Shown: piece after piece, positions 21,901-56,525 of the stretch
Position numbering within the stretch: the first letter of the stretch is position 1
Layout of the letters: each line of letters begins with the position of its first letter
Assembly: GCF_006345805.1 (NCBI RefSeq)
Contig: NC_042998.1
Coordinates: forward strand, 144,088,001 to 144,152,000
Direction of reading: 5' to 3'
DNA: 64,000 nt
From: Octopus sinensis
Lineage: Eukaryota
The notes under the pieces: model-generated
Databases searched by the model: none
What the model was told of the DNA's origin: nothing
Seen by the model: the letters and a program-made list of their open reading frames with translations, nothing else
Position numbers and translations under genes: made by a program

Positions 21901-22584
21901 CATCTTGTATAAAATATAAAGATATAAGATATTTTAAAACAAACATTTGCTGGTGTAAGTCAATGGATTGTATCAGTCGTAAAAATACCACAAAATACGA
22001 TACACAAATGCGGATAAATGTATTACTTCATACAAAAAAAATGACAAAAATATATAATCATTAGAGATTTTGTGGCAGTTGACTATGGAAGCCAATAATG
22101 ATATAATTTTGATTACTTGATACGGAGGAGAAAAGTGATTTCGTTTGACAAGGCCATTTTAAAATATTTTTTTTAAATAGAGCAAATATACTCGTCGGTG
22201 ATTTTCTTATTTCCAAAGCCAATGAAATAAAGATCGACAAGAATATCATTTTCCTGCGGGATTTGAATTAGGAAAGAGATATTTTTAAAATTGGCACCAG
22301 ACCAGAAATTTGTTGAGGAGATATACTCGATTCGATGATCGTTTTATTGATCTCCAGTGGCAGGTGTGAAAGGAGGGAGGGGATCGAAAAGTAAAGTCGA
22401 TTACGATGGGTTTGAAATCAGAACAGGGAAGGGAAACAGGAGCTGGACAACATAGCGATGGTCACTCTAGTCACTGCACAAGTTTCTGTCAATCTAATAA
22501 TACTTTGAGATAATAAAAATATTTCATACACCAGCAGGAAACTTTAATATTTTACGTAAAAAAAAAAAAAGAAAAAAGACATAC

Positions 22585-22715
22585 CGGAAGATACGACGTG
22601 CAAGTTTCTCCCAGGGATTTGTAAAAGGAAATAGCTCAAGCTGGGATCCGAAACCGATTCGTAAAATTTGGATCACTGAGCATGTCTCACCGTGAACAGT
22701 TGTTTTTATTATCAT
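22585..22715 (-). CDS. NEDD4: Candidate internal first exon MIIKTTVHGETCSVIQILRIGFGSQLELFPFTNPWEKLARRIF(R), phase 2
   Basis: 131-nt ATG ORF ending TTC CG|gtatgt. Same phase as the donor of exon 37604-37689; inside a CpG-retaining island. Confidence 0.5.
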
Positions 22716-23429
22716 AAGACGGTAGTAGAATATTAAAAAAAAAAGCCTTGGCTATATTCAAAGTAAAAATAAAGTGTGATGGATAAAATCTTTAAAAACA
22801 TAGACCGGCAGCATATTAATTACACACACATACACTCACACAGGCACCTGTTGGTTATAAACGATATGATGACTGAATAAATTGAAACAGTTTTGACTGA
22901 GAAGGTTGACAGTAGTGAAGTAAAAGATGAAGAAAGGAGCAAGGATGTCACAATGACACGACTCCACCTCGGTCAGTAATTTTGGGTGTGGTCGACCATT
23001 TATACATTCAGTTCGCGTTGCAGTAAAAAAAAAATGCCATTCATCTCCTTTACGTTGTATCTACACATATGCACACACGCGCATACATTTATATATAAAA
23101 CAGATCATACAAAATATATTATACACACGCGCACACACGCACACACAAAACAACTTTCAAGACCACTAACAATAACACAGCAACAGCAGCAGCATGGCGC
23201 AATGCGTTTGTGTCCATCTGGTTTCATAGAACTGATATATTTTCAGAATATGTTACTTAGAGATTTCCATAGGCTAGCAAACTGTCGCATCGTTCATTCA
23301 ACCAAAACCGATCACCAGAAGCAAACTAGTTCAGTTAACGTCATTTGTCATGAATATATATCAAGTGATCAAAGACTCTCTGGATGGGGAAGTTGGTCGG
23401 TGGAAGCTAGTCACACTGGCATCACCTAC

Positions 23430-23446
23430 CGACACAGGGCAGCCAT
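23430..23446 (-). CDS. NEDD4: Candidate internal first exon MAALC(R), phase 2
   Basis: ATG GCT GCC CTG TGT CG|gtaggt; phase 2; inside a CpG-retaining island. Confidence 0.45.
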
Positions 23447-23717
23447 CAAATTGCACGACACACACAAACAGTCGACAGTGTGTATTGGGAGAATTAATAT
23501 AATACATACATATCATATTAATTATTGGAGAAAAAATAGTACATGTGACTTGGTATGACAGTCAAAATACCTAACATACAAACAACTGTAGGTTTATAAA
23601 CATCTTCCACGATGCAATTACTGTTGTATGGATGGAGCTAAGTGCAAATTATATGTGGTCCCTTCACCTGGGTGTGGCATGAAATGAATGTTCATACTCT
23701 ACATACCAGTATTGATC

Positions 23718-23748
<31 letters not shown>

Positions 23749-24040
23749 CGAGCGTGTGTGTGTGTGTGCGTTCGCGCGCAAGTACACATGATGAATTTTT
23801 TAAAGCAGTTTCCCGCAATCAATCGTAAGACCTCAATTATCATATCTCATCTTTGTCAACACAAACGTGAGCTAGCACACACGATTGAGGTTTGATTAAA
23901 ATAACGATTGAGAGCAGACAACATCCTCGAAATCAAATTAATCGACAGGAATCAATCAATTAGGCCGCCCTAAAACTTGACTGACATTTAATATAAGGGA
24001 ATGAAATGTGAAGCCGTTAAGGATAAGAGGAATTTCGCTT

Positions 24041-24300
24041 GGTGCAGCATGGCTGAATGGTAAGGAAGCTCGCATCGAAATCGACAAGGGCTCGAGTTCG
24101 ATCCCATTCTGTGGCATCTTGGGCAAGTGACTTTAACCTTTGTCGTTGGTCTATCTAACTCAAGTGAGTAAAACTTGGTAGAAGCCATGAGATAGTTGAT
24201 TGTACCTACACTTCGAAAGCCTTGTCTCATACTGCGACACTGCGTCACCTGATTTTACGTTAATTCGATTGATCAAACAACTGAATCCACATCGTTAAAC
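24041..24300 (+). mobile_element. Old tRNA-derived SINE with intact Pol III boxes
   Basis: A box TGGCTGAATGG at 24050-24060, B box GTTCGATCC at 24096-24104, followed by a ...cttgggcaagtg SINE core. Confidence 0.7.
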
Positions 24301-25468
24301 AGAGATCATTTTCGTTAGTGCCTCAACTATCAACTGCACTTAAAATAAATTTTATAAGGCTGAAAAGCAAAATCAACTATAGTGGGATCAGATTGTAGGG
24401 TGAAAAAGTATGAAAGTAAAAACTACAAAGTTTGTTTTGCACTGGTTGCTATCGTTTCTAATAACAATGACACAATCCTAGTTCCCATTTTGAAATCACC
24501 TCTAAATTTGTTGTGTATAAATTTAGTGTGTTCCACACCAGAATGCTAATTTGGAACATCATCATCATTTAACGTCCGTGTTCCATCTTAGCATGGGTGG
24601 GACACGTAATATATCAACAAAACAGTTAACTGAACAGCTAATAATCTTTTTTAAAATATTACATTACCAATTTTTACTTTCTAACCAAATGGTTTCAGGT
24701 CCGTTGTCACTGCTTAGCACTTTGGGCAAGTACCTTCTGTTATAGCCTAAGGCTGACTAAATCCTTATGAATGGATCTGGTGAATGGAAACTGAAAGAAG
24801 CCTACCACATTTTTTGTGTGTCTGTGGGTGTGACCGTCTGTGTCTTGACATCATGGAATAGTTATGAATGGCAGTCAGTATCATACAAGTAGAATACCTC
24901 ATTCAGTTTTCCTGAATATATGCCCAGTCATGGGGGAAATATTACCTTGTTTCAAATCAGGTGAGGGTTGGCAACAGGATGGGTAATGTAGTTATAGAAA
25001 ATTTACCACAATCAACTCCTTTGCAAGCATAGGAGACTGGAGAGAAAAACAAAAACCATTTGTATGATGGAGATATTTGTTTACAACCACCATACAATGT
25101 CAAGACAATGTGACAAACACACAACATATGCTTATAAATATGCCGCAGGCTTTTTAGCTTCAATCAACCAAATTCACTCACAAGGCTTTTAAATATACAT
25201 GTGTTTTTATATATATAAGTAAATCTAATTGCTTTTTGGACATGCACTTTTTTTTATATACATCAGCAATGACTTTCTCACTGGTAGTGTCTTCCCCAAA
25301 TATTGCAAAATTGTAATTCTTTTTCCTCAAATAAATTGCACTTTATACTCAACCAAGAGTCCACTGCATCTTATAGCAGAAACAGTTGTAAGCTAATGAA
25401 GTTCATAACATAACCACTGTTTTTCCTGTGTCATCTTTTTCTTACACACATATGCATACATACATATA

Positions 25469-25690
25469 CAGTAATCCCTCGACTATTGCAGGTGTTACAT
25501 TCCAAAAAAACCGCATGATAGGTGAAAATCCACGAAGTAGAAACGGTACTGTACTGTATATTTTGTTTTCTTATTTTTATAATTTGTATATATTTATTTT
25601 ATTATAAATGCAAAACAACACCAGAGGAATCAACGTAATTTTAAGTATTAAACCACGATAGGTGAACAGTGATATGGCATGGTATTACTG
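25469..25690. mobile_element. Tigger/pogo-like MITE with TA TSD
   Basis: TA|cagtaatccctcg ... ggtattactg|TA. Partial copies at ~5006-5190 and 48987-49100. Confidence 0.75.
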
Positions 25691-26411
25691 TATATTTATA
25701 TAGGCGCAGGCATGGCTGTGTGGTAAGAAGCTTGCTTCCCAACCACATGATTCCAGATTCAGTTCCACTCCATGGCACCTTGTTAGTCATCATCATCATC
25801 ATTTAGCATCCGCTTTCCATGCTAGCATGGGTTGGACGGTTCAACTGTGGTCTGGGAAGCCAGAAGGCTGCATCAGGCCCAGTCTGATCTGGCATTGTTT
25901 CTACGGCTGGATGCCCTTCCTAACACCAACCACTCCGTGAGTGTAGTGGGTGCTTTTTACGTGCCACCGGCACAGGTGCCAGATGAGGCTGGCAAATGGC
26001 CATGGTCGGATGGTGCTTTTTACATGCCACTGGCACGGGGGGGCCAGGCGAGGCTGGCAACGGCCACGATCGGATGGTGATTTTTATGTGCCACTGGCAT
26101 GGGGGCCAGTCGAGGCTGGCAGTAAATGGAAACTGAAAGAATCCTGTCGTGTATATTATATGTGTATGTGTGTATGTATATATCTGTGTGTGTGTATGTG
26201 TCAGTTCCCTTTCATCACTGCTTGACAACTGGTATTGATGTGTTTACGTTGCCATAACTTAATGGCACAGCAAAAACAGACCAATAGAATAAGTAGCAGG
26301 CTTTAAAAAGAAATAAGTACTGGAGTTGATTCATTTAACAAAAAACCCTTCAAGTTGATGCACCAGCATGACCACAGTCAAATGACTGAAAAAAAAAATA
26401 AAAGAATATAC

Positions 26412-26576
26412 AGCGCAGGAGTGGCTGTGTGGTAAGTAGCTTGTTTACCATCCACATGGTTCCGGGTTCAGTCCCACTGCGTGGCCCCTTGGGCAAGTGT
26501 CTTCTACTATAGCCTCAGGCTGACCAAAGCCTTGTGAGTGGATTTGGCAGACGGAAACTGAAAGAAGCCCGTTGTA

Positions 26577-26634
<58 letters not shown>

Positions 26635-34652: not shown

Positions 34653-34690
<38 letters not shown>

Positions 34691-34776
34691 CATACACACA
34701 CACACATCTTACATAAAAACACTTCCATATTCACACATATATATAACCCTATTCTGTATGTGTATATAAACATATA

Positions 34777-36006: not shown

Positions 36007-36009
36007 TGC

Positions 36010-36042
<33 letters not shown>

Positions 36043-37603
36043 TACACGTGGTGCCCCAGCGTGGCCACAGCCTTGACTGAAACTAGTAACAAGTAAACTA
36101 TATATGTATATATACACACACACAGAGCCCTGAAATGTTTATAGTGTATCATATAGTTGTAGCATTTTATAACACACACATATACACCACATATGCAAGC
36201 ACTCGACTCTGGGTGAGCTGCTGCTTTTGATGTTGTTAGACTTTGGCATGTGATAAGAATGTAGGTAGCACCAACACGATCGGATTTCAACTGGAAGAGA
36301 AAACAAAACAAAACTTCACCAGGGTTTATCAATGTGTGCAATACAGACACGAATTTCGATCATTAAGGTATTCGGTTGTTTGTATTTCACTGGAAACGTC
36401 ATTAATGCCCTGTCGTAATTAATATAAAATCTGTTTCCTATTAACTTTCCGAGAGTGTATAGTTTTTAAAAGTAATTTTGCACATGAACGTTTTCAACGG
36501 TGTAAATTACGATTACGTTGATAAAGCTTAAGGAGGAAATCTGGTGGGGTTATGGATCATTCTTCCACTAACTTTGATTCTGTTATTGACGATTTTCATA
36601 ACTTTCACGTTTTTATTTGTTTTCGTTTTCCTGAGGTGGGGGAAGGTTTATGTTTGCAACATCAACAAAAGCTACACTCGAAAACGTTTCTCTGCTAAAT
36701 TTTGTTTACGCAAAGTCAAAGAGGGGGCGCTAAACTGTAGTTATGCCATTTTCCCTACTACTTAGTTATGAATAATAAACTTGTAGCTCAGCGGTGACGA
36801 TACGAGATTACACGTACACTACGTATGTTTACACACACATACTATTGATTAAACTTGCAAAATATGTCAGAACTTCAACATCTAATTGTTATTGTCATTT
36901 CTTTCAACAATTAAGAGTGGAATGAATACACACACACATTTACACACGTTACATATATATGTATATAGCCCCTATATTCACTCATTTAGTGGGCCAAGTT
37001 ATTGTGGAGTTTACATGAAAAGCTTCTCGACTAGAAACATGGCCTCCGCAAGTCACACTCAGAACAAATGTCATTTTTACAGGAAACATGACAACGGAAA
37101 AGGAAAAAAAGTGTTTCCGAACAATAGTTGATGGTGGAGGGGGAAATGGTTCTTTTTATTGTAGACCCAGAATGGTATTTGGCGTAAAATGTCCAATTAC
37201 TTTGTGTCAGTTCCAGTGGCGAGAAAACGGAAGCCTCATCTCTCGCTTGAGAAAAGATGTGAGGGAAGAGAAAGAGAGGGAAACAGATGGGGGGGAGGAT
37301 ATAAACCAGCTGCCAGACTTATTGGAGACATATTACGCACACACTTTATGAATAATACACACACATACACAATACACACGCATACATACATCTTTTATCT
37401 TTTACTAGTTTCAGCTCGAGCTGCGGTCCTGCTGGGGCACCGCGGTTTAATATATATATTATATATTACACACGCACACATGCATACATACATATTACAC
37501 ATGTATTTATTATACACACACATACATACGTGTGTGTATTCTGTGTTCGATAATGCTGGATGGAGAGAATGAATAGGTAAAAGAGGAAGGATAAACGACT
37601 CAC

Positions 37604-37689
37604 CTAGCGCCGAATATATCCTTTTTCGCGAGATTAACTCCAGCAATAATCTTTACATGAATTATCTGAGTAGTTCCAGGTACGTCGCT
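37604..37689 (-). CDS. NEDD4: Nedd4-family HECT E3 ubiquitin ligase, first C2-domain exon (86 nt, phase 0 in, phase 2 out)
   Basis: Minus strand: acceptor ttttttgtttgcag, then AGC GAC GTA ... GGC GCT AG, donor gtgagt. Translates [28 protein letters not shown](S). [10 protein letters not shown] is the Nedd4/Nedd4L C2 signature (human NEDD4L from memory: [22 protein letters not shown]), and the phase-2 intron after GAS matches vertebrate gene structure as I recall it. Confidence 0.95.
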
Positions 37690-38475
37690 CTGCAAACAAA
37701 AAAAAAACTAAATAATAACAACAACAATAGGCGGCACAAGGCCAGCAATTTTAAAGGGAAGCAGTTCGTCGATATCATCGACCCCAGAATTTGACTGATA
37801 CTGCGTTTTATCAAATCCAGAGGGAATAAAGGTAAATACTTCGGCTGGATTTGAACTCGGGACGTAAAGAGCAGCAACAAAAAATTGCAAACCATTATTT
37901 CCCCACCCCACAGCCAATAAAGTAGAGTGTAGGACGAGGACAATTTATAGAGATGTTTATAGAAAGATGGCACAGGAATTTAAAGGTTTCAATGTAGGAA
38001 CGTGAATGTTAGAGAACCAAATTCTATAAACTTCGAAACTTGACACATGTCGAAGGAACCACAAGAACAGTGGTAACAAGACAAATAACAGTCAACCATC
38101 AAAATTAAATTTGCAATATCTACAGATGCTTAAGAAGTGACAGATGAATGGAAAGAGGGAGAAAATTGTGGAAAAATCAATATAAATAATTTCTAATATG
38201 ACATTTTGAAGTTGTCATACATAATTTTTCCATGGTTAATTAAATGTTGCTGTTGTTTAAAGTTAAACTTTACATATATATTTTCTTTTATTATTATGAT
38301 TACCAGAAGAGGGAGGCCACAACATCTCTACGCCAAACACGTTATATAGTGTGGTACAGATATATAATGCATAAAAGGCGTTAACAGATGTGTTGGTTAT
38401 GTACTGTATGCATACATAGAAATGAATAAGGTGTGAAGTGGAAAAAAAAACTGCTGATTGTTCATGTTTACTTAC

Positions 38476-38517
38476 AGGGATTTCCTGCAAGCCGTATATT
38501 TCATTTTGGGCAGCCAT
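38476..38517 (-). CDS. NEDD4: Nedd4 canonical first coding exon MAAQNEIYGLQEIP
   Basis: ATG GCT GCC CAA ... ATC CCT followed by donor gtaagt; phase 0, in frame with 37689. Resembles vertebrate first exons (NEDD4L MATGLGEPVYGLSEDE, from memory). Preceded by a long CT-rich leader. Confidence 0.85.
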
Positions 38518-38589
38518 AAACAAGCGAAGTTAACAGTTAGACAGTCGTGAGATAGTGTGTGAGTTAGTTGTGATGGGAGGTGATAAATA

Positions 38590-39010
38590 GTAGCACTAAC
38601 AGAGAGGGAGAGTGAGAGAGAGGGAGAGCGACAAAGACAGCTATAGAAAGGAAGTGAGAGACAGAGAGAGAAAGAGTTATAGAAAGAGGGTGAGAAGACA
38701 GCTGTAGAAAGGAGGGGAGAGAGAAAGAGAGCATGACACACGCACACATACACAGAACTATAGAGATTAGATGAGAGAAAAACAGCTATAGAAAGAAGGT
38801 GAGAGAGGGAGATAGTTATAGAAAGGGGGTGAAAGAGAGGAAGAGCCATGAAAGAAAGGAGGCAGAGATAGAGGGAAGAATCTATAGAAAGATATTTACA
38901 GAAAGAGTAGGAAAAAGACAGCTTTGAAAATAGAAGACATATGTAAAGAGGGAGAAAGTTATAGAAAGGAAGGATGAAGGCAGAAAGAGAGGGAAAGGTT
39001 GTAGAAAGGG
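38590..39010. repeat. Purine-rich degenerate minisatellite in the putative Nedd4 5' leader
   Basis: Eight copies of T(A/G)TAGAAAG embedded in GA-rich units. Confidence 0.8.
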
Positions 39011-39978
39011 AGGTAGAGAGAAAAAGACAGGGCATTGAACTGACAGTGCGTGGAAGGGTAGAAGTGACAGTGTTCATATTGGTTATTATTAGGAGTAGCC
39101 AGCGTCATACAAGGAGTGTAAAAAGGAGTGTTATATATATACATATATATTTTTGTTTTTTTTAAAGTGTGGGTGATTGAGGTGGCATTTTTCTTACATA
39201 ACCATTCTATTATTCTAATGTACTTCTATTACATTTAATCTAATGCAAAATTAGTCATGAAACAAAAATTTAAATGTTATTTTACCAAAAAAATCTAAAT
39301 TTAGATTTAATTCATATACATAAAACTTTTTTGAAGATTAAAGACTATACATACACACACATTTATTTATTTACATCATACATACACACAACGTACAAAA
39401 ACATATGAGAGAGAAAATGACAAGTAAAACGTATGTATGCATCGTATATGTATTTATATACTAGCATTTTGGGGTGTATATGCATGCTTCAGTCTGTGTT
39501 GCTATTTCCTACACAGCGCGCACGTGCAAGTGAGTATACCCAAATACATATATTTATGCACTAACTTCAGCATCTTAGCCGCTTTGCTGAACACTCACAT
39601 ATATGTTAGTTAGTGAACACTATACATAATGTCATTCTAACTCTATCTCAGTATACACACTAGTTTTATCTGATGTAGCATAACGAACTGTAATCATAAA
39701 TTAGTGTCACTTGCCTGGACAAATGACAAGACAACAAGTAATAGTAGTAAAAACATAAAAGCTATGCTCCACTGAAGACAGGGTCGTTGAATGTGTGTGC
39801 GTGTGTTTGTGCTATGTTTACGACACAACAAATGCTGTCTGTTAATTCTCACAAGACCTAAGTGCAGTTAAAGCTCGGAAGGTAAAAGCCAGAACAGGAT
39901 GGTAGAAGACAGTGCGTCTGAGAGGTGTACACTGTTTTAGTAAAACAGCTAAATTTTGTCCATTCAAAATACACTCAC

Positions 39979-40041
39979 TTTTTCTTCCCAATCACAAGCT
40001 TTCTGATGGTTCATCCATATAAGAAATGCCATCATAGTCAT
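39979..40041 (-). CDS. NEDD4: Candidate alternative first coding exon MTMMAFLIWMNHQKACDWEEK
   Basis: 63-nt ATG ORF ending GAA AAA|gtgagt, phase 0. Lies about 120 nt downstream of a YY1-type motif, in CpG-retaining sequence. No homology support. Confidence 0.5.
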
Positions 40042-40167: not shown

Positions 40168-43100
40168 TGAGAAATAGTGCTGTAGGGCCATGTATATTGG
40201 GTGTCCACTGTGAGCACCGCACAACCATCAGAGGTAGTAAAAGCTATCATAAATATCGTTATCACTCAATAATATGGTCATGAACCATAATGGGAAAACT
40301 CATTATTCTGTCCCTTGTTATGAAATACTCTGAGTTATACTGAGATAGCACTGCACATCTCACAGCTTGTTGCATTATATATACTGGACAGATGGAGAGA
40401 TAATGGGAGAGTGATAAAAATAAGGTCTTTTCACCAGTTTTTTTAAATTCACTTTTACATCTCTCTCGAAGAAAAATACTCTTTCTTTCTAGCATTCTAC
40501 ACTCCCTCTCCCACAAACTAGCCTCTTTAGTTTGGTTGTTCAAATTCATTGAACCCCTTTCCTCTTCCAATTTTTTAATATTCAGCTTATTAGTTAAGAC
40601 TTATTCTTTCTTACTCATTTTCACACTTCCCTCTAATAAATACTGCATTTTTGTATTTGCATACATTTTCGTATATGCATAAATAAATTTAAATAGATGT
40701 TAGCAAGTGAGACTGATTTTCCTTATGGTAATTCTGTTCATGTGGTAGACTGAAATAATATGCCTTTACAAATCTATTAATGTAAACCTAGAAACAAAGA
40801 TTAAAACAGACTGAAACACCTAGATATTCCTTTTTAATGTTGACTTTTGAGCAATACTTGTGCCAGCATGGCACCACAGAACACACTAACATAATAATCT
40901 TCATATGCAACTCAAGAAGAAGCATGTCATACTATCTGTGAAGCAGAAACAAACTTATAGTGATGTTTCATACTTGTGTTTCAGTGACGAAAGTTTCTGA
41001 AAAGTATGACATTAAAAAGCAGACAATTTCAAGAATATGCAAGACTAAAGACAAACTGACTACATTTTCTTTGAAATATAATACTGATTTCAAATTTTGG
41101 CACAAAGCCCGCAATTTCAGGGAAGAGAGTAAGTTGATTACATTGACCCTGATTACTCAACTGGTACTTATTTTATCAACCCTAAAAAGATGAAAGACAA
41201 AGCTGAACTCAGTGGAATTTGAACTCAGAGCAAGAAAACAGACAAAATACCACTAAGCATGTCATCTGGCATGCTAACAATTCTGCCAGCTCACTGCCTT
41301 CTTTGAGACATAGTACTAATGCAAATTTTAAATCATTATTAGTTGGTGCATAGAAGGCTATGAAAAATGTAAAAGGCACAAATCCTAAGAAAGCAGTAAC
41401 AAAGTTTGTTATCCAGCAACAATCCCATACTAATTACACCCAAGTTGTTTAAATTCAAATTCCAGCAACAATCCCATGCTAACTACATCCAAGCTGTTTA
41501 AATTCAAAGTGCTGCTGTCAAACACAGTATGTATTTTCAAAGTTCAATGCATCAGTTGCCTGTGCATTGTTACCACTCTAAGATGTTCAACATGCATATC
41601 TTTGGTGACTGGTTTTACTCACATTTCATTCTAGCAGTGCATAAATACTAGGAAGAGGTCTTCAAATTTCCTGCCAATGCCAGTGTCGCATACTTGGCAC
41701 ATAAGAATCACCCTTCAAACTTTGGGCCTCATGGAGGCAGTGACAAGTGACCAAGATCACTGGCAATATACTGTGCTTGAGAAAACCTGTGAAGCCAAGT
41801 GGGATCATAGTTGTGGCCAATATCAGTGTTTTGTAACTGGCACACATGCTGATGACACATAAATAACACCCACTACACTCTTGGAGTGGTTGGCATTAGA
41901 AAGGGCATCCAACTGTAGAAACCATGCCAAATCAGACTGAAACCGGATGCAGCTCCCCAGTTTTCAGTCAAACCATCCAACCCATGTCAGCATGGAAAAT
42001 GCACTTTCTCATCCAAATGGTTACCAACATGAGAATAACAACAGCAGAATAAGATGCATGAACTTAATACCCAATGTTATCTCCATTATCCAACTAATGA
42101 ATTAAGGCAGGGAAGGGGGAGTCAAATAAAGTGGTCAATAGTATTTACTGATTAAAGGGGTCAGTAAACACCTGAAATGATTTTGAGCAATAAGGGAACT
42201 GAATTATTAGTAAACTGAATCCAGAATAACATGGGTAATTTCCAGCCAAATATTGATGCAATAACTAGTATCCACCAAACACTTATTTCACATTAAATAA
42301 ATCAATATAATTTCGCAGAATTTTTATTGTTCTTTATCAATTTCCTTATATTTCTTTAAATATTTCTGATTAAAAATTGGTATTGACACAAAAGAATGAA
42401 GGAATTATGGTTCTTGAACCAAGGAATTTTTTATTAGTCAAACTTCTTAATTTATTTTAGAAACTTACATGATAGGTGGGGGAAATAAGTTTTCAATGGT
42501 TCCATGAAGGGGCCAACAATATAAGAAGTTTGCCACCACCTGGATAGATATAATACAAACTAAGTTACTTGAACAATATTTTTGTAGCATGGTAAACAAC
42601 CAAACTTGTCTGTTCTACGATATCCAACCATTTTACATTATATTTTTCACTCAGGATACACCAACACTGCTAGATATAATGAAATGGTAGGATGGGAAAA
42701 CAAACCCAAGAACCCCTGATTTGGAATGTGTTTGTATGTGTTTTAGTGTCAGCTTTTCCATACTATATGGCATGTAAAAAGCACCATCCGAACGTGATCG
42801 TTGCCAGGCCTGCCATACTGGCCCCCTGTGCCGGTGGCACGTAAAAAGCACCCACTACACTCTCAGAGTGGTTGGTGTTAGGAAGGGCATCCAGCTGTAG
42901 AAACTCTGCCAGGCCAAACTGGAGCAGCCACTGGCTCTCCAAACCTCAGTCAAACTGTCCAAAACATGCCAGCATGGAAAACGGACGTTAATCAGTGATG
43001 ATGATGATGATATGAGTCAGAGAGAATTCATTGAGGTAAATACGGTTAATGTTCTTGTTGGACTTTTCCAGTAAAAACATAAGTGGTGGTGGGGAAGGGT

Positions 43101-44282: not shown

Positions 44283-45538
44283 CGAGGGGCGTTCAATAAG
44301 TAATGCCCCTGACCCACTTCCCATAGCAGTAGAGCAACGAAACTTGGCACAGTTATTAGTCTTTTTCTACATAGGAACCACCCAGAGTTACGCATTTCTC
44401 CCATCGTTTGATGCGGCTCTGGAGACCGTTTTTGTAGAAGAACCCAGCTTGGTCCTCTAACCTCAACATGACTTCAGAAATCAAGGCTGCATCATCTGGG
44501 AAATGCTTGCCTTTCAAAAACAACTTCATGATTGAGAAGAGGTGAAAATCAGAGGGTGCAAGGTCAGGAAAGTAGGGGGGATGGGGAGGAGTTCATAGCC
44601 ATACGCCTGTGCTTCTGATCTGGCGACAAGCGAGTTGTGGACCGGAGCGTTGTCCTGCAGGAGGAGGATACCTTTGCTGATCTTGCCCCGCCTCTTGATT
44701 TTGATAACTTCTCTTAATTTCCTCAAAAGTGAAGCATAATAGGCTCCTGCAATTGTGGTACCCTTTGCCAGGAAATCTGTCATCACTACTCCGTCCTGGT
44801 CCCAGAAGACTGTGAGCATGACCTTGCCAGCGGAGGGCTGCACCCTTGCCTTCTTTGGAGGGGGTGAGTCATGGTGCTTCCACTGCATTGACTGGGCTTT
44901 GGTCTCTGGATCATCGTGATGGACCCAGGTTTCATCCTGTGTAATCAGTCTTTTGAAAAATTTTGACTCATCTTCTTGGCACATCTCCAAATTCACCCTC
45001 GAGCACTCGACGCGTTCTTGCTTCTGGAAAGGCGTGAGCAACCTGGGAATCCATCTGGCAGACACCTTTTGCATATGCAAATGGTCATGAATGATAGTTT
45101 CCACAGACCCGGTACTAATCTTGACCTCATGGGCTATTTGGCAAATAATTATGCATCGATCTTCCAAAATGGCAGCCTCAACTTGACGGACAGATGCCTT
45201 ATCAATGGCAGAGTTCCGACCATGTTTGAATTCACGATGCCAGCGTTTTACAAGGTCATATGATGGGGCATCATCACCATAAGTTACTTTCATTTCATCA
45301 AAAGTCTCCCGTGGTGTGCGTCCTTTCAAATACAAAAACCGGATCACTGCTCGACACTCAACAGGCTCCATTTCACACTTGACTCGGTTCAAACACCTGT
45401 AAATCAGAAACCACAATTAATTCAGAGCTGTAATTTGCCACTTACTCTATAGAGATATAAATGATTGCACATGCAAAATTTCAGCTAGATCAAACAACTG
45501 CAAGTGGGTCAGAGGCATTACTTATTGAACGTCCCTCG
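44283..45538 (-). mobile_element. mariner-family (DD34D) transposon, 1256 bp, TA TSD
   Basis: TA|CGAGGGGCGTTCAATAAGTAATGCC ... GGCATTACTTATTGAACGTCCCTCG|TA. Transposase MEPVECRAVI (45371) to YVEKD* (44356) with WIPRLL, TQDETW and QDNAPVH motifs; internal deletion after the first HTH and a frameshift before the YSPDLAPSD-like motif. Confidence 0.96.
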
Positions 45539-45589
45539 TATGTCATTTGACTAGAGTTCTACAGTTGGATACTCTCCCTATTAAAGACT

Positions 45590-47832: not shown

Positions 47833-48921
47833 GGCTAAAGTATGATAGAGGGACAAGCACAGCAGATGCATGGATGAAGGAGAAAGAGGAAAGTAGTGAT
47901 GGGGTGCTAGAGCAAACTTTCAAGAAACAAGAAAGTGAGCATAATAATGTGTGTGTGTGTGTGTATATGTGAGTGTGGCACAGCTAATAGGGGGGCAAAG
48001 AGATGTGACTACTCCCCACAAGCACATTTTTTCAAAATTGGCACCTTTTCAATAATTTCTTTTAACTCTTTAGTTACCTATATCATTAGTTGTGAGTTTC
48101 ATACATAATAATATTGTTACTGAAACATGAAATTAATGAATGTAGAATACAATTACATGTACTATAACTAATGAAATATTTTCAATTTAATATGAGGAAT
48201 GAGTTAATAATTGTTTGGTATGTATCATGGTGCCTTTTGTTTTTAATGTGCTTACCCTTACTCAACTATAGAACCTGGCTACGTCTCTGATATATACATC
48301 ATCATTTAACATCCATTTTCCATACTGGCATGGGTTGGACAGTTTGACTGCAAACAGGAAAGCTAGTGGGCTGCACCAGGTTCCAATCTGTTCTGGTATG
48401 GTTTCTACAGCTGGATGCCCTTCCTAATACCAACCATTATACACACACAATCATGATCATCATCTTATCCATACTTGCATGGGTCAGGCTGAAATCTTCA
48501 AGCACATTTTCAATAGTCAGATGTCCTTCCTGTCATCAACCCTCATATGTTTCAAAGCAAGTTAATATTTCCCCATTGGCCAAACATGTTTTCATGGAGG
48601 ACTGGAAATGAATGACACCTCTTCGATGAGACTGACACTTGTTTAAAACTATCACACGATGTCAAGGCGAGACAGTACAAACACATACACACATATATCA
48701 GGCTGCATTCAGTTTCCATCTAACAGAGCCACCCACGAGGCTTTGGTCTGCTCGAGGATACAGTAGTAGAAGACACTTCCCCAAAGGGCTGTGCAGTCAG
48801 AGGGAATCTGAAACCACATGGTTAGGAAGCAAACTCCTTAACTACACATACATGCCTGCACACTACATACATACATCTTACACATATATACATATCTATG
48901 TTCGTTCGTTCGTACACCCAC

Positions 48922-48984
<63 letters not shown>

Positions 48985-50273
48985 TACAGTAATCACTCGC
49001 CATATAGCGGTTCACCTATCGCGTCCTCAGTACATCGCGGATTTTTCTGGTTAATTTATATCGCAGGTTTCTGCGGCAGATATTAAAATTATATTAAATT
49101 ATATTAAAATTTTTAAATGCCGATTTTCTTTGTAGATTCGGAATATCCGCAGTCGAAAAGGTGGGTTTCTGTAGAAAAAAAATAATAAATAAATAACCGA
49201 AAGAGGGTGCGGTTCATGTTCTTTACCTCCGCCATATATACATAAATATACATACTGTTCCATGAGAAGAGGTGTTACGGTCCACTACCAGCATCCTTTT
49301 CTAAGAGAAATGGCGAAGAGTTAGCAACCTCTTAGTAAAAACTAATTTGTTATGGCATCAGTCAAAAGACTGATGAAAATATGGAGAGCACGGAACAGAA
49401 CTACAGAAAAGGTGGTAGGAGGAGAAAGCTAATCTGTAAACTGTTTTATTTTTCTGAAATGCTTCTCTCTTTAAATGTCAAATTTGCGCGATTGCACGGT
49501 TTCCATGGAGAAACAATTCGAATCTCGTGCCTGGTGAGCACGTGCTCATAGGTAATTATATGATGTGTGTGTGCAAGCATGTATGAATGTATGTAGCAGT
49601 TCGATTGCCTATGTGTATGTGCGTGCGTGAGTGTGTATTTACGAATATGTACGTATGCCGCTTGATTGTCTCTGAGTTTGTGTATATATGCTCATGTTAG
49701 GTATGTCTGCATGTTTGGGTGTGTGTGTTGGATAAATGACGTGAAAATTAAATTACGGCCGGTATGTTTGAAAACAAAAGCATAAAGCAAAACCATTATT
49801 AACAACACTATTACTATCAGCAAGCCTTCTACATATTTATTAACACACATAAATAACAGTAATCTATAATTATTATACGATCCGGAAAACCAAAAACTAT
49901 TTCACAATCGATAAACAATTTGTTATATATACACATTCATATTTAATAGCTTAATAGCTGAAACAGAAAAATACCAACAGCTAAGAGGTTACGTATACAA
50001 CACAGAATAATAATAATAATTATTATTATTATTATTATTGTTGTTGTAGTTATTGTTACAAAAGGATAAAGCAAAAACAAGAAAAATTGAAATTTCGTCA
50101 TAATTACCATATCTCCAGCCCTAATCACACCTTTGTATGTATTAGAAGAAGCAGCTAATACTAAGAAGGTCTTTTTCTAGCTGATAACTTGACACGAGGT
50201 AAAAATATAATCGAGGTTACTGGATGAAAAAATATTGACATATATTCGTTTCCTACTTTATTGTTGGTGGAGT

Positions 50274-50334
50274 GGATCAGTAACCGAGAAAGACACATTA
50301 TATATATATTGGATCAGTAACCGAGAAAGACACA

Positions 50335-50402
<68 letters not shown>

Positions 50403-50430
50403 CAGTAACCGAGAAAGACACATTATATAT
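50274..50430. repeat. Triplicated motif tggatcagtaaccgagaaagacaca separated by (TA)n
   Basis: Three exact copies at ~50274, ~50310 and ~50398. Confidence 0.9.
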
Positions 50431-50816
50431 ATATATATATATATATCGTTTGTAGAAAACATAAATCTGAAAGAAGCACACTCTAAGATGTAGAACAGTA
50501 TATTTAACAAAAAACATTATATATATATGTGTGCGCATATATAAAATGTATGTATATACATGTGCATATGGGTGTACTTATGTGTGTATATGCATGTATA
50601 AATGTATGTGCACATGCGAGTATATAAATATATACATACGTGCGTGTGCGTGTGTATACGCACATGGATAGTTTCACAAATATAGCAATTGAAAAAGTAC
50701 TCCCCGTCCTCAAATCAAAGACCATGCTCGCTAATTGAGAATTTATTTAGTTCATCAATTAACAATTTTGAGACATCAGACTTCATTACTTCTGTAAATA
50801 AGTACCGTATTCTCAC

Positions 50817-50870
50817 CTCCCACCAAAGCCGGAGAACTTTACGAAAACGCAAAAATTTTGGACGAAACAT
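50817..50870 (-). CDS. NEDD4: Candidate alternative first coding exon MFRPKFLRFRKVLRLWWE
   Basis: 54-nt ATG ORF ending TGG GAG|gtgaga, phase 0, inside the 49-51.5 kb CpG-retaining island. Confidence 0.55.
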
Positions 50871-52316
50871 GACACAATGTTACAAATAACATATATATAC
50901 GTAAAGAAATAATGATTTCAAAAATAAATACCATTTGTTTTGAGTTTAGACTTTTGTTTTCTAAGGTAATTTTTGAATCGGTTAAAATGTATGTCAGTTT
51001 CGAGTATTGAATGATAAAAGGTTTGAAAGGACGGTAAAGGCGTAGGGAGACTGTTGTAAGTGAAACTAGAGAAAAACTGAGTAGAAATGGGATATGATTG
51101 AAGGAAAGAAGGAAGTAAAGGCAGGCTTGCCTGTAGTTGTTATGAGTGAATACGGATAGAAAAGGGATTTTTTTTAAAGCCAATGAATGGTGTGTTAGTA
51201 ATCTATGAAAAGAATTTATGGTTGGTCGCTTAGATAGGGTGTGTCATGTGAATGGACTCCTAGGTGTATGTAAATCTATAGCTACATAGGCTAATACACC
51301 TATGATGATAGGTACAAATGAAAATTTAGTCAAGGTACAAGTGCTCTCGCATTAATTCGCCATAAATACTCTCGTGTGTATGTGTGTGTATGTAAGTATG
51401 CTTGTAATGTGTGTATATGTGTGCGTTTTATTATTTTAAAAGCAGAAGTCACAAAAAGTGTCTCAAGTTCCGAAAGTTGCGTGAACGAAGTCAGATTGTA
51501 ATTTCTACCGTTTGCAATAAAATATACTGTTATACCAAATATGTATACACACAGAGACACACACAAAGATATATATGTGTGTGTGTACATACACACACAG
51601 AGATAGACATTGAGGGGTAGACAGACAGAATCAACAACATATCATTTAACGTCCACTTTCCATAGTGGCATTGGCTGAGCTGCTCTTTACGGTCAGAGTC
51701 CTATTTTACTAAGATCTACAGCGCCCAAAGACTTGGTGCCATTACTTGTCATTTAGCTCAGATTCTGTTGCTAGATGCAATTCCTATGGCCAACCACTTT
51801 ACAGAATGTACTGGGTGCATTTTCTCCTGACACCAACTCAAGAGAGGTTGGATACTTCTTAGAAACAGGGCCGACTTAGCAGCAATGTATCCACCCTGCG
51901 GCATTCAATGCACTTGGCACTATAGTATTCATTTATAGACAGCAGGCCACAGCAAATATAAATCAGAATTGGGCCCCTAGATTTGTGTGGCCACAGGAAA
52001 CTAACTGCACACTGAGCCCATTTACCAACCACTTTCTAGTATGTACTGGGTGAATTTTTCCAGGCACCAATACCAGAGAGCTTGTTTTGCTCAGCAAACA
52101 CCTGTTGGGGAAAAGATGTAGGGCTGGGTGGTTCCAGATAGTACTAGCACAAGAGAGGAGAGGGTGGTTTGTACAAAGTAAATATAGAATACTTAGTAAC
52201 ATAAAAAAGACATGTAGACTGAGGAGGACAGAAGGAAGGCAATAAGAAGGACAGAAATGAGTGGTTGAAAGGATGGGTAAGAGTTTGAGTGTACAGCATA
52301 TCAATAAGCTAGGGCA

Positions 52317-52318
<2 letters not shown>

Positions 52319-52360
<42 letters not shown>

Positions 52361-53015
52361 TATATATATATAGATAGATAGATAGATAGATACATACATA
52401 CATACATACATACATATAAATACAAATAGAAATATATATATATTTAAATATATATATATAAATATTATATGTATAAATATATATATAAATATATATATAT
52501 GTATAAATATATATATATATGTATAAATATATAAAATATATATATATGTATAAATATATATATATATATATAATATATATATGTATAAATATATATATAT
52601 ATAAATATATATATATGTATAAATATATATATATATAAATATATATATATGTATAAATATAGATATAAAATAATATATATATGTATAAATATATATATAT
52701 AAATATATATATATATGTATAAATTATATATATAAATATATATATATATGTATAAATATATATATATAAATATATATTATATGTATAAATATATATATAA
52801 TAAATATATATATATATGTATAAATATATATATATAAATATATATATAGATAAATATATATATATATGTATAAATAATATATATAATAATTATATATATA
52901 TAAATATAATATATATTATATATATAATATATGTATAAATATAATATATATAAATATATATATATGTATAAATATATATATATATATAAAATATATATAA
53001 AATATATATATAATG

Positions 53016-53046
<31 letters not shown>

Positions 53047-53108
53047 TATGTATAAATATATATATATATATTATATATATATATATAAATAATATATATA
53101 TATATTAT

Positions 53109-53140
<32 letters not shown>

Positions 53141-53314
53141 AATATATATATTAATATATATATAAATATATATATATATATATGTATAAATATATATATA
53201 TATATATGTTATAAATATATATATATATATATGTATAAATATATATATATATATATGTATAAATATATATAATATATATGTATAAATATATATAAATATA
53301 AATATATATATATG

Positions 53315-53363
<49 letters not shown>

Positions 53364-53369
53364 GTATAA

Positions 53370-53403
<34 letters not shown>

Positions 53404-53558
53404 GTATAAATATATATATATATATATGTATAAATATATATATATATATATATGTATGTATAAATATATATATATATATATATGTATAAATATATAGTAT
53501 ATATATATATATATTAATATATATATTATATAAAATATATAAATATATATATATATAT

Positions 53559-53589
<31 letters not shown>

Positions 53590-54110
53590 CTAAATATATC
53601 TATAAATATATATATACATATATATATATATAAAATATATATTTAAATATATCTAAATATATATAAAATATATATATAATATATATATATATTTAAATAT
53701 ATATATAAATATATATATACATATATATATATAAATAAATATATACATATATAAAAATATACATATATATAAATAAATATATATACATATATATAAATAT
53801 ATATATAACATATATATAAATATATATACATATATATAAATATATATATAATATATATAAATAAATATATATATACATATATATAAATACATATATATAT
53901 ACATATATATAATACATATATATATACATATATATAAATACATATATATATACATATATATAAATACATATATATATACATATATATAAATACATATATA
54001 TATAAATAAAATATATATATATATATAAATATATATATACATACATATAAATATATATATACATACATATATACATATATATAAATATAATATATATATA
54101 AAATATATAT

Positions 54111-54141
<31 letters not shown>

Positions 54142-54432
54142 AATATATATATACATATATATAAAATAAATATATATAATAAATAAATATATATAAATAA
54201 ATAAATATATATATAAATAAATAAATATAAATAAATAAATATATATAAATAATATAAATAAATAAATATAAATAAATAAATATATATACATATATATAAA
54301 TATAATATATATATACATATATTATAATATATAAATATACATATATATATATATATATAATATACATATATATAATATAATATATATATTATATATATAT
54401 TATATATATATATAATATATGTATATATATAA

Positions 54433-54470
<38 letters not shown>

Positions 54471-54496
54471 TATAGACATAAATATAAGTATAAATG

Positions 54497-54562
<66 letters not shown>

Positions 54563-54710
54563 CACAACACACATCTACGTGTATGAATGAATGTATATAC
54601 ATGCAAACATAAATGTTTTTACATGTATGCATATATACATACATTATATATATATACATATATATACACACACACTGATATATATTATATATATATATAT
54701 ATGCATTTAT
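52319..54710. repeat. ~2.4 kb compound (TA)n / TATAAATA / TATG microsatellite
   Basis: Almost exclusively A/T, with alternating TA interrupted by AAAT, TGTA and TACA variants. Confidence 0.98.
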
Positions 54711-54719
54711 AGATCCACA

Positions 54720-56100
54720 CACACGCGCGCATATGTAATAACGTATATATACAAATAGATTAATTTAGACACACACATCAGAGAGAGAAAGTTAGGGGAA
54801 ATAGAGTGAGAACTAACGCGGAAATGTTTTATTGAAAGCCTTGAAATGTGAAAAAAAAAAAAAAAAGATGGAATACATTTTCTGTTAAAGGTATAGCTGC
54901 AACCCAGTTCTTTCTTACAAGAACAGCTGGGTTTCGATGTAGCACGGAGGAAATAACGGATTTATACAGTAGCAGTTTATTGACAACAGCAAAATATCCA
55001 TTATATTTCGGTCATCATATTTATAATCTAAATAAATAGAGTAAAATCATAATTATACACACATACATACACAAAAATAAATCAAATTTAGGATGACTTA
55101 AATTTCAATTGTTCGCAAACCTACCGCTTCAGTTAAAATTTACATTTAACAAACCTTTCTTTCTAAAACATTACGGAGGGAGTTAATATAAGAAACGAAG
55201 GGAGCAAGTTTTCTGCTGTGATTCTTCTGCAACTGATGATAAGATATAACAATGATAAAGGTTCAGTTCTCTACTCTACTACAATTTTCCATTTGAATCC
55301 CGTCAGAAATATGCTGATACCCTAATTGGTTCTTGAAGGAAACTAAAACCTTCTTTAAATATAAGATTACTGAAATTTAATAGTGGATATTCGTGACAAA
55401 TTCGAATGTTAGACACGGCTTAAGTGGAGCGGAATATCTCCATAACCGGGAACACTTAAGATAACAATAATAATAACAATGATAGCGATAGCGTGCTTAA
55501 TTAATTAAGGGCAGCAGAAGAGAAATAATTAATCCTGAATTCCCTACCTGCGGTGACATCGGCATTACTGCTCGCATTCTCTCTGCATTTCTAGTAATAT
55601 CTGGAAATCACGAGCTCTGTGAGAAATATTAGTCCAAGGAATGCCAAGCACCACCACGAAGCAGATGCTTCCGACTGTCTCCTCTACTCCACAAGCTTTC
55701 TGCACCCCTCCATTTACCCCCACTACCGTCGCCAACGTTCTTCCTCGCTCCCTTCCTCCCCTCATACCACTCTCTATCAGCATTCGATTCTAACTTATCG
55801 ATTTCACTTACTGCATCACTTCTGGTCTCGTTCGTTGTCTTTATTTATTTATTTATTATTACAACTACTACTACTGTTGTTGTTGATCATAGTAGTAGTA
55901 GTAGTAGTAGTTCTTTAATTTTTCTCTTACATCGTTCGTCTTCACCAGAAAGGTTTACGTTAAGGATTAAGGGTTTACAACCTTTACTCATGTATAGATT
56001 TTGTTTTAAACTAAACACAACACTCAGTCTTAAATTAAGAGTTGAGGGGGGTGGAGGCGACGTAATAAGATGTTGCAACCTTCACGTCTTTCTAAATGGC
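54720..56100. promoter_or_regulatory. CpG-retaining island, putative distal promoter
   Basis: Frequent CG; contains the 55548 donor exon and a leader of ~300 nt. Confidence 0.6.
55548..55577 (-). CDS. NEDD4: Candidate alternative first coding exon MRAVMPMSPQ
   Basis: 30-nt ORF with three in-frame ATGs, ending CCG CAG|gtaggg, phase 0, inside the 54.7-56.1 kb CpG-retaining island. Confidence 0.55.
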
Positions 56101-56525
56101 ACTAAGTAATGCTTATGAACTGAAACAGCTTCAACTAAGAACTGAAACTTTGTCATATAGGTTTAAACTCACTATAAGCTTTACTCTTCTTGCTCTCACA
56201 GTATTCTCTAAATATGCATAAATTTAAACTGGTTAATTTGATAAAATATTAAGATACAAACAGCTCCTGAAATGGTAAATAAATGAGATGAGATGAGAAG
56301 GAAAGCTTTGGTACCCAGTAGGAAAGAAAAATTTACATAGGGAAATCAAAAGGGTATTTGTTAGATTTATTTTGATTCCTTTTCCTCTTTTCGGAAAGAC
56401 ATACCAGTAAGTAACCAAGGCTCATTCTGAGTTAAATCTTCTTCAGAACATTTATTGTTAAGAATTTAACAAAACTTCAAGTCTACACTTTTTTCCATTT
56501 ATATATGAATGTATAAGAGGTGGAA

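What the first reader, a model, noticed from the sequence alone, without database searches (positions are those of the whole stretch)
22500..56430. Phase-matched array of alternative first exons: a variable-N-terminus system for Nedd4
Seen: four CpG-retaining islands, each with short ATG-initiated ORFs ending at good GT donors on the minus strand. Upstream of the C2 exon, the stronger candidates (55548, 50817, 39979, 38476) all end in phase 0, which matches the acceptor at 37689. Both candidates in the downstream island (23430, 22585) end in phase 2, which matches the donor at 37604. Known: vertebrate NEDD4/NEDD4L use alternative promoters to make C2-containing and C2-lacking isoforms. Inference: one constant ligase body carries 6 or more chemically distinct N-termini selected by promoter choice. 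Only 38476 has homology support, and I picked the donors by eye, so chance contributes.
Basis: partly seen in the sequence, partly recalled or inferred. Interest (0 to 1): 0.75.

Follow-up and report, generated by a model that had tools for sequence, protein, structure and literature searches.

The report
Octopus NEDD4 alternative first exons

Summary
The window is Octopus sinensis CM016860.1:144,088,001-144,152,000. It lies inside the ~345-kb NEDD4 gene on the minus strand.

The phase match is what chance gives. ATG-ORF plus donor candidates occur at 0.315 per kb per phase: 5.9 phase-0 candidates are expected upstream and 6 are seen, and the plus-strand control has 8.

The general idea is right, but it is already in RefSeq. 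Isoforms X1-X11 carry seven N-termini, all joined to the first C2 exon at 37689. Three of these starts are in the window:
- MAAQNEIYGLQEIP (38517-38476), the ancestral "IYGL" exon
- MRAVMPMSPQ (55577-55548)
- a lone ATG (50934-50932)

In the 50.8-kb island the annotated donor is 50932, not 50817. Sites 50817, 39979, 23430 and 22585 match no product. No isoform lacks the C2 exon, and the DPYV exon is not in the window. Four further starts and a shared 34-aa exon lie upstream of the window (the X1 start about 183 kb beyond its edge).

Cuttlefish-lineage mRNA assemblies show the same junctions, and vertebrate NEDD4L uses alternate promoters. Verdict: real, ordinary and already known, with most of the specific calls unsupported.

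The parts
37604..37689 (-). First C2-domain exon of NEDD4 (SDVPGTTQIIHVKIIAGVNLAKKDIFGA + AG). It is the common acceptor exon for every annotated 5' end. It enters in phase 0 and leaves in phase 2.
   Evidence: Sequence. 100% tblastn match to the RefSeq isoforms. phmmer match to the NEDD4L/NEDD4 C2 structures 2nsq, 3b7y and 3m7f. Genomic ORFs from other invertebrates end at the same ...KKDIFGAR-stop and begin after a ...Q acceptor.
38476..38517 (-). Coding part of the alternative first exon of isoform X8 (MAAQNEIYGLQEIP|GTAAGT). This is the ancestral 'IYGL' first exon.
   Evidence: 100% match to P0022/X8. Homologous N-termini occur in a cuttlefish-lineage mRNA, Patella, Pomacea, Mytilus, a sea urchin and human NEDD4L. 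The 217 nt upstream are ATG-free, at the 99th percentile of ATG spacing.
50932..50934 (-). Start codon that forms the last three bases of an alternative 5' exon (isoforms X10/X11, protein M|SDVPG...). The donor is ATG|GTATTT.
   Evidence: The collection records the 824-aa product at this 3-nt position. Locus L001 10001-10003 equals window 50934-50932 at 100% identity over 20,003 bp. The 313 nt upstream are ATG-free, at about the 100th percentile. The site lies inside CpG island 48651-51700. The donor PWM score is -2.3.
55548..55577 (-). Coding part of the alternative first exon of isoform X9 (MRAVMPMSPQ|GTAGGG).
   Evidence: 100% match to P0023/X9. Inside CpG island 54551-56150. An out-of-frame upstream ATG lies 11 nt before it. 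No homologue appears among the decapodiform or other mollusc N-termini.
54551..56150 (.). CpG-retaining island around the X9 first exon (o/e 0.92). Presumed unmethylated promoter region.
48651..51700 (.). CpG-retaining island around the X10/X11 start exon (o/e 0.95). Presumed promoter region.
36101..38150 (.). CpG-retaining island covering the C2 exon (o/e 0.87). It begins about 330 bp downstream of the X8 first exon.
21651..24600 (.). CpG-retaining island inside the >37.6-kb intron after the C2 exon (o/e 0.90, 88 CpG). It holds no annotated coding exon and its role is unknown.
   Evidence: No large repeats. No Pfam hit for its longest ORF.
50817..50870 (-). Unsupported.
   Evidence: Exists, but it is in no RefSeq isoform. 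It lies 62 nt downstream of the annotated exon end at 50932. A transcript starting at that promoter would carry the ATG at 50934 as an upstream ORF that stops at 50839-50841.
39979..40041 (-). Unsupported.
   Evidence: Exists. Not in any island (o/e 0.55). In no isoform. Upstream ATGs lie 4-14 nt away.
23430..23446 (-). The phase-2 ORF is only MAALC+CG. Unsupported.
22585..22715 (-). Unsupported.

Best explanation
The region is the middle of the Octopus sinensis NEDD4 gene, a C2-WW-HECT ubiquitin ligase on the minus strand whose coding sequence spans about 345 kb.

The gene uses several promoters. Each drives its own first exon, and every first exon, or a shared 34-aa second exon, is spliced to one acceptor in phase 0. 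That acceptor is window 37689, the start of the first C2-domain exon.

Three annotated starts lie in the window:
- The ancestral exon MAAQNEIYGLQEIP (38517-38476).
- An exon that ends in the start codon itself (50934-50932), which gives a protein beginning directly at the C2 domain.
- MRAVMPMSPQ (55577-55548).

The last two sit in CpG-retaining islands that are presumably unmethylated. The first lies just upstream of a third island.

Four further starts (MPSDRRR..., MDHLHLL..., MLPWSPYLEQ, MIPSVLQGVGFQ) and the shared exon SQLIPPRQPSGSSRIFQKSSKRRQSAPALGLSNSQ lie upstream of the window. The X1 start is about 196 kb upstream of the 50934 start codon, roughly 183 kb beyond the window's edge.

Shown here: the identity of the gene, the exon positions, the common junction, and conservation of the IYGL exon and of the long form across coleoids.

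Inferred: the islands are promoters, and for the short in-window forms the choice of promoter and leader matters more than the 1-10 residue peptide.

For: Identity of the window: it is 100% identical over 20,003 bp to GCA_006345805.1 CM016860.1.

Isoforms: cluster P0014 holds RefSeq isoforms X1-X11 plus O. vulgaris and Argonauta hians proteins. Their sequences show seven N-termini, all followed by SDVPGTT.

Mapping: tblastn places X8, X9 and the C2 exon in the window at 100% and finds none of the other N-terminal exons there.

Related coleoids: the decapodiform cluster P0145 includes intronless 2.6-2.9-kb RNA-seq contigs. Their N-termini are MATEPPAIYGLARIA|SDQPGTT, MPSDRRR..., MLRSQ|, MLLRRISLHC| and MSLLLSGK...|SQLLPP. 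They diverge exactly at the homologous codon boundaries.

Other molluscs show alternative N-termini joined at the same point.

Islands are described. The ATG-free leaders of 217 and 313 nt before the X8 and X10/11 starts are.

[quoted passage not shown] 2003).
Against: The octopus isoforms are Gnomon predictions. I could not see the underlying RNA-seq or any TSS data, and no octopus transcript fragments are in the protein collection.

X9 has an overlapping upstream ATG 11 nt before its start and no homologue in other species. Its peptide may never be made.

The X10/11 donor (GTATTT) is weak by a generic donor matrix.

That the islands are unmethylated or act as promoters is inferred from CpG retention alone. 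One CpG-rich patch outside the range (16151-17000) is a young inverted repeat instead.

Absence of the four unsupported exons from an annotation does not prove that they are never used.
Confidence: 0.85

Rival explanations
1. Six or more promoter-selected first exons in this interval, including 50817, 39979, 23430 and 22585, give chemically distinct N-termini. The downstream island produces C2-lacking Nedd4 by splicing to the DPYV exon.
For: The sites exist with compatible phases. Sites 50817, 23430 and 22585 lie in CpG-retaining islands. 50817 has a strong donor score of 6.7. Vertebrate NEDD4L makes a C2-lacking short form from an internal promoter (PMC3798379).
Against: None of the four peptides appears in the 11 RefSeq isoforms, the O. 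vulgaris or Argonauta proteins, or the decapodiform transcripts. No isoform lacks the C2 exon. Candidates of this class are as frequent on the control strand. The 50817 ORF is preceded by the annotated ATG at 50934, and all four have nearby upstream ATGs. The phase-2 ORF at 23430 is only 5 codons.
Confidence: 0.1
2. The intronic island 21651-24600 is a regulatory element, such as an enhancer, or the promoter of an unannotated non-coding or antisense transcript. It is not a Nedd4 first-exon promoter.
For: It is single-copy, 2.95 kb long, with CpG o/e 0.90. No coding product is annotated there, and none of the 11 isoforms starts there. No Rfam or tRNA hit and no Pfam hit for its longest ORF.
Against: There is no direct evidence of any activity. 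The three other large islands in the range are all associated with Nedd4 exons, so by analogy a fourth promoter is possible.
Confidence: 0.6
3. The short in-window N-terminal peptides (MRAVMPMSPQ and the lone M) are themselves functional determinants, for example N-degron, acetylation or localisation signals. On this view they are not by-products of promoter and leader choice.
For: They change the residue after the initiator Met (Arg, Ser or Ala), which in principle alters N-terminal processing. This is an inference from general N-end rule knowledge and was not tested here.
Against: MRAVMPMSPQ has no homologue in decapodiforms or other molluscs. Its ATG is preceded by an overlapping upstream ATG. 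Only the IYGL exon and the off-window long form are conserved.
Confidence: 0.1

Closest known systems
RefSeq (Gnomon) models of Octopus sinensis NEDD4, isoforms X1-X11 (e.g. XP_029648340.1, XP_029648377.1 = X8, XP_029648385.1 = X9, XP_036355909.1/XP_036355913.1 = X10/X11)
   Same: This is the same locus. All isoforms join the C2 exon at 37689.
   Different: The annotation has no product from 50817, 39979, 23430 or 22585. Four of its starts and a shared exon lie outside the window.
Vertebrate NEDD4L (Nedd4-2) alternate promoters and N-terminal isoforms (Itani et al. 2003, cited in PMC3798379; Fu et al. 2013, PMC3798379)
   Same: It is the same gene family (C2-WW-HECT). Several promoters and first exons give different N-termini on one ligase body. 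The canonical first exon carries the (V/I)YGL motif.
   Different: Vertebrate NEDD4L has a documented C2-lacking short form from an internal promoter. No such form is annotated or seen for the cephalopod gene.
Decapodiform cephalopod Nedd4 mRNAs (cluster P0145, with Acanthosepion pharaonis proteins; Logan contigs from SRR24189505, SRR24189490 and SRR27666073)
   Same: At least five N-termini are joined at the homologous junctions. The IYGL exon, the MPSDRRR exon and the shared SQL(I/L)PPRQ...KRRQSAP exon are conserved with octopus.
   Different: The short first-exon peptides (MLRSQ, MLLRRISLHC, MSLLLSGK...) are not alignable with the octopus ones. No counterpart of MRAVMPMSPQ or of the lone-ATG exon was seen.
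Clustered variable-first-exon loci (protocadherin alpha/gamma, UGT1A)
   Same: An array of promoter-linked first exons, each spliced to a common downstream exon.
   Different: In those loci the variable exons are paralogues that encode a whole functional domain. Here the exons are unrelated (no self-similarity) and encode 1-14 residues in the window.

Membership tests
NEDD4-family HECT E3 ligase gene | N-terminal C2 domain | tested here: met
   Exons 38517-38476 plus 37689-37604 match the NEDD4L/NEDD4 C2 structures. The full proteins carry PF00168.
NEDD4-family HECT E3 ligase gene | [quoted passage not shown] | tested here: met
   Precomputed Pfam hits PF00397 and PF00632 on P0014/P0019, whose N-terminal exons map to the window at 100%. 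Those exons themselves lie outside the window.
Alternative-promoter / alternative-first-exon gene (NEDD4L-like) | Two or more mutually exclusive 5' exons joined to one common acceptor | tested here: met
   Seven N-termini precede SDVPGTT in the RefSeq isoforms, and three of them map to the window. Transcript assemblies of a related coleoid lineage diverge at the homologous junction.
Alternative-promoter / alternative-first-exon gene (NEDD4L-like) | An independent transcription start site and promoter for each first exon | not testable with these tools
   Only indirect evidence is available. CpG-retaining islands lie at or next to the three exons, and ATG-free leaders precede two of them. No CAGE, RNA-seq or methylation data were available.
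C2-lacking short isoform from an internal promoter (NEDD4L-short type) | Transcripts that start downstream of the first C2 exon and skip it | tested here: not met
   None of the 11 O. sinensis isoforms, the O. vulgaris or Argonauta proteins, or the 8 decapodiform transcript proteins lacks the exon. The three Acanthosepion gene models that start at ...VNPRDN look like truncated predictions. Absence from these sets is not proof of absence.
Variable-exon cluster of the protocadherin/UGT1A type | Variable first exons are paralogous and encode a functional domain | tested here: not met
   There is no sequence similarity among the candidate exon regions, and the peptides are 1-21 residues.

The most novel reading that the evidence does not exclude
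The fourth CpG-retaining island (21651-24600) lies inside the >37.6-kb intron after the first C2 exon. It could be an unannotated internal promoter that yields an octopus Nedd4 with a truncated, Ca2+-insensitive C2 domain. That would be an independent parallel to vertebrate NEDD4L-short and would extend a coleoid first-exon array that already has seven annotated starts spread over about 210 kb.
Probability: 0.1. Interest if true: 0.35.

Novelty: already known. Interest (0 to 1): 0.15.

Why it matters
It matters little beyond annotation. Alternative promoters and N-termini are a documented property of NEDD4-family genes. For this octopus gene they are already in RefSeq.

The useful outcomes are corrective:
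- Phase-matched ATG...GT strings picked by eye are at chance frequency.
- The real donor in one island is a weak GTATTT that the eye would skip.
- The conserved, substantial N-terminal variant of coleoid Nedd4 lies outside the window. It is the MPSDRRR... exon followed by the shared SQLIPPRQ...KRRQSAP... exon.

If the intronic island proved to be a promoter for a C2-truncated form, that would be a modest case of convergence with vertebrate NEDD4L.

Tried and rejected
1. I searched the window for the DPYV exon with a degenerate DNA pattern and with tblastn, first using a remembered NEDD4L C2 sequence and then the real octopus protein. It is absent, so the acceptor for any C2-skipping form cannot be examined here.
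2. The representative-library search with the 42-aa N-terminus returned no cephalopod protein. It found only genomic ORFs and distant NEDD4s. These were useful for exon-boundary conservation only.
3. The short-fragment search with a 158-aa query, aimed at octopus transcript fragments with other N-termini, found no cephalopod hits.
4. The exact-ORF look-up of the C2-exon ORF, meant to fetch other octopod genomic contigs, found nothing on record. Cross-species conservation of the candidate exons therefore could not be tested.
5. Fetching the whole gene locus failed because the range is too long. A 3-nt record for the 824-aa product gave a 20-kb anchor instead.
6. I looked for repeats as an explanation of the candidates. 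There is no self-similarity at any candidate site.
7. Rfam and tRNA scans of the window found nothing.
8. Pfam scans of the ORFs in and around the islands found only mariner and Tc1/Tc3 remnants elsewhere.
9. A literature search for octopus alternative first exons found nothing specific.
10. The donor PWM uses generic metazoan frequencies written from memory. It was used only for relative counts between strands, not as evidence for any site.


Full report
**What the sequence shows**

The window has 35.6% G+C and an overall CpG o/e of 0.37.

On the minus strand, ATG 38517 opens MAAQNEIYGLQEIP, which ends at 38476 before GTAAGT. A strong acceptor (tttttttttgtttgcag) precedes an 86-nt exon, 37689-37604. 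That exon encodes SDVPGTTQIIHVKIIAGVNLAKKDIFGA plus the bases AG, and GTGAGT follows it.

Joined together, the two pieces match the C2 domains of human NEDD4L and NEDD4 structures (2nsq at E 5.8e-5; also 3b7y and 3m7f). The match includes the VYGL motif of the first exon.

One caveat applies at 23430. The phase-2 ORF there is only MAALC, and the longer ORF at that donor is in phase 0.

Four large CpG-retaining islands are real: 21651-24600, 36101-38150, 48651-51700 and 54551-56150. Their CpG o/e is 0.87-0.95, against a median of 0.27 for 1-kb windows. Sites 38476 and 39979 lie outside them. A 2.2-kb (AT)n microsatellite fills 52320-54558.

**Is the phase match more than chance?**

No. I scored every GT with a generic donor matrix and asked which phases have an ATG-initiated ORF of at least 4 codons upstream.

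| Region and strand | Phase 0 | Phase 1 | Phase 2 |
|---|---|---|---|
| Upstream of the C2 exon, minus strand | 6 | 2 | 5 |
| Same coordinates, plus strand (control) | 8 | 6 | 4 |
| Downstream of the C2 exon, minus strand | 4 | 7 | 6 |
| Same coordinates, plus strand (control) | 4 | 7 | 11 |

Over both strands of the whole window the rate is 0.315 candidates per kb per phase. That gives 5.9 phase-0 candidates expected upstream against 6 seen, and 4.8 phase-2 candidates expected downstream against 6 seen.

**What it is**

A word-based protein search found Octopus sinensis 'E3 ubiquitin-protein ligase NEDD4 isoform X2'. The query used the window's 42 N-terminal residues. Its 90% cluster holds RefSeq isoforms X1-X11 plus one O. 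vulgaris and one Argonauta hians protein.

The sequences show seven different N-termini, each followed by SDVPGTTQIIHV:
- MAAQNEIYGLQEIP (X8)
- MRAVMPMSPQ (X9)
- a single M (X10/X11)
- four forms that pass through a shared exon, SQLIPPRQPSGSSRIFQKSSKRRQSAPALGLSNSQ:
  - MPSDRRR... (X1/2/5/6)
  - MDHLHLL... (X3)
  - MLPWSPYLEQ (X7)
  - MIPSVLQGVGFQ (X4)

tblastn places X8 at 38517-38476, X9 at 55577-55548 and the C2 exon at 37689-37604, all at 100% identity. It finds none of the other N-terminal exons, nor the SDPYV exon, in the window.

The gene's coding span is 344.9 kb. The collection records the 824-aa X10/X11 product at a 3-nt position. Fetching that position gave a 20,003-bp locus that is 100% identical to window 60934-40932. 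Two results follow:
- The window is CM016860.1:144,088,001-144,152,000.
- The X10/X11 start codon is window 50934-50932, the last three bases of an exon followed by GTATTT.

By the same arithmetic, the X1 start lies about 196 kb upstream of that codon and the stop about 148 kb downstream. Both are off the window.

| Site | Outcome |
|---|---|
| 38476 | Exact hit (X8) |
| 55548 | Exact hit (X9) |
| 39979 | In no annotated product |
| 23430 | In no annotated product |
| 22585 | In no annotated product |

If the 50817 donor were used by a transcript from the same promoter, the ATG at 50934 would open an upstream ORF that stops at 50839-50841. No annotated isoform skips the C2 exon.

**Independent support for the general mechanism**

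A second cephalopod cluster (P0145) is 86% identical over the N-terminal region. It contains Acanthosepion pharaonis proteins and proteins from Logan RNA-seq assemblies. The transcript-derived members begin with:
- MATEPPAIYGLARIA|SDQPGTT
- MPSDRRRSLQ...
- MLRSQ|
- MLLRRISLHC|
- MSLLLSGKQSVPSRKSVYIAVH|SQLLPP...

Three of the contigs were fetched. They are intronless, 2.6-2.9 kb long and carry complete ORFs. Their sequences diverge exactly at the codon before AGTGAC (SD...) and before AGCCAA (SQLLPP). Alternative 5' exons joined to this acceptor are therefore a conserved coleoid feature.

The IYGL exon is conserved from octopus to cuttlefish lineage, limpet, apple snail, mussel, sea urchin and human. 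The MPSDRRR exon and the shared exon are conserved among octopus, Argonauta and the decapodiform.

Other molluscs' annotations also show alternative N-termini at the same junction, often Arg/Ser-rich. Genomic ORFs from other invertebrates end at ...KKDIFGAR-stop and follow a ...Q acceptor, so the exon's boundaries are old.

**Sequence-level signs of which in-window starts are credible**

| Start | Distance to the nearest upstream ATG | Percentile of ATG spacings on this strand |
|---|---|---|
| X8 (38517) | 217 nt | 99th |
| X10/X11 (50934) | 313 nt | about 100th |
| X9 (55577) | 11 nt, out of frame and overlapping | 23rd |

MRAVMPMSPQ has no homologue elsewhere.

My inference is that X8 and X10/X11 are real translation starts. 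X9 is a real transcript form whose 10-residue peptide is doubtful. For the in-window forms, what varies in practice is the promoter and the leader rather than protein chemistry.

**The fourth island**

Island 21651-24600 is single-copy and as CpG-rich as the others. It has no annotated coding exon, no Rfam or tRNA hit and no Pfam hit for its longest ORF.

It may be an enhancer, the promoter of an unannotated RNA, or an unannotated internal Nedd4 promoter. It has a vertebrate precedent: Nedd4l-short lacks the C2 domain and comes from an alternate promoter (PMC3798379). It has no support in the data I could reach.

CpG retention alone is not proof of a promoter. The CpG-rich patch at 16151-17000 coincides with a 229-nt inverted repeat that is 96% complementary, probably a young foldback element.

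**Comparison with the known, and verdict**

The gene meets the NEDD4-family definition (C2, WW and HECT domains). It also meets the definition of an alternative-first-exon gene.

It is not a protocadherin/UGT1A-type variable-exon cluster. The exons are unrelated to one another and tiny.

The phenomenon is documented for NEDD4L (PMC3798379, citing Itani et al. 2003) and already annotated for this very locus. The finding is therefore a partial rediscovery:
- The concept is right.
- Two of six sites are right.
- One island is right but with the wrong donor.
- Three sites and the C2-lacking branch are unsupported.
- The phase argument is at chance.

Interest is low.

Noticed in passing
window 52320-54558: A 2.2-kb imperfect (AT)n microsatellite lies between the X9 and X10/X11 first-exon islands. 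G+C there falls to 4-17%.
   Followed up: partly
window 16349-16577 and 16985-17213: A 229-nt inverted repeat, 96% complementary, with 407 nt between the arms. It is probably a young foldback or MITE-like insertion, which shows that CpG retention here is not always a promoter mark.
   Followed up: partly
window 44526-45416 (-) and 17884-18342 (+): Transposon remnants in the Nedd4 introns. One is a mariner/Mos1-type ORF (PF01359, PF17906). The other is a Tc1/Tc3-type HTH piece (PF01498).
   Followed up: yes
window about 42768-43010, 25787-26029, 4750-4996, 10037-10228; ORFs 6036-6449 (-), 6832-7137 (+), 25920-26228: An interspersed repeat family of about 250 bp, 81-82% identical between copies. 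Its translations share the strings ...PPDWPSCQWHVKAPP.../...DWPPCQWHIK.... A 64-nt tandem repeat lies at 25949-26121. Probably a SINE-like element; not classified.
   Followed up: no
window 38520-39080 (-): A long C/T-rich tract (ctctctc...) lies directly upstream of the X8 start codon. The plus-strand GC skew is +0.42 over 38001-39000. The last 217 nt contain no ATG. This is probably the leader and core-promoter region of the ancestral first exon.
   Followed up: partly
off window (upstream of window 64000); proteins P0019, P0017, P0267: The shared exon SQL(I/L)PPRQPSGSSRIFQK..KRRQSAPALG is nearly invariant between octopus, Argonauta and a decapodiform. It contains RRQSAP, which resembles a PKA site and a mode-1 14-3-3 motif. 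That is notable because 14-3-3 regulates vertebrate Nedd4-2. The resemblance comes from memory of the motifs and was not tested.
   Followed up: no
L001 10001-10003 = window 50934-50932: The gene-position index records the 824-aa X10/X11 product as a 3-nt 'gene', its first CDS segment. That quirk allowed the locus to be fetched even though the 345-kb gene range was too long.
   Followed up: yes
proteins P0262-P0264 (Acanthosepion pharaonis): Three gene models start MLFNLMKYVV...SESFFIVNPRDN, that is, inside the C2 domain after what looks like intronic read-in. They are probably truncated predictions rather than true C2-lacking isoforms.
   Followed up: no
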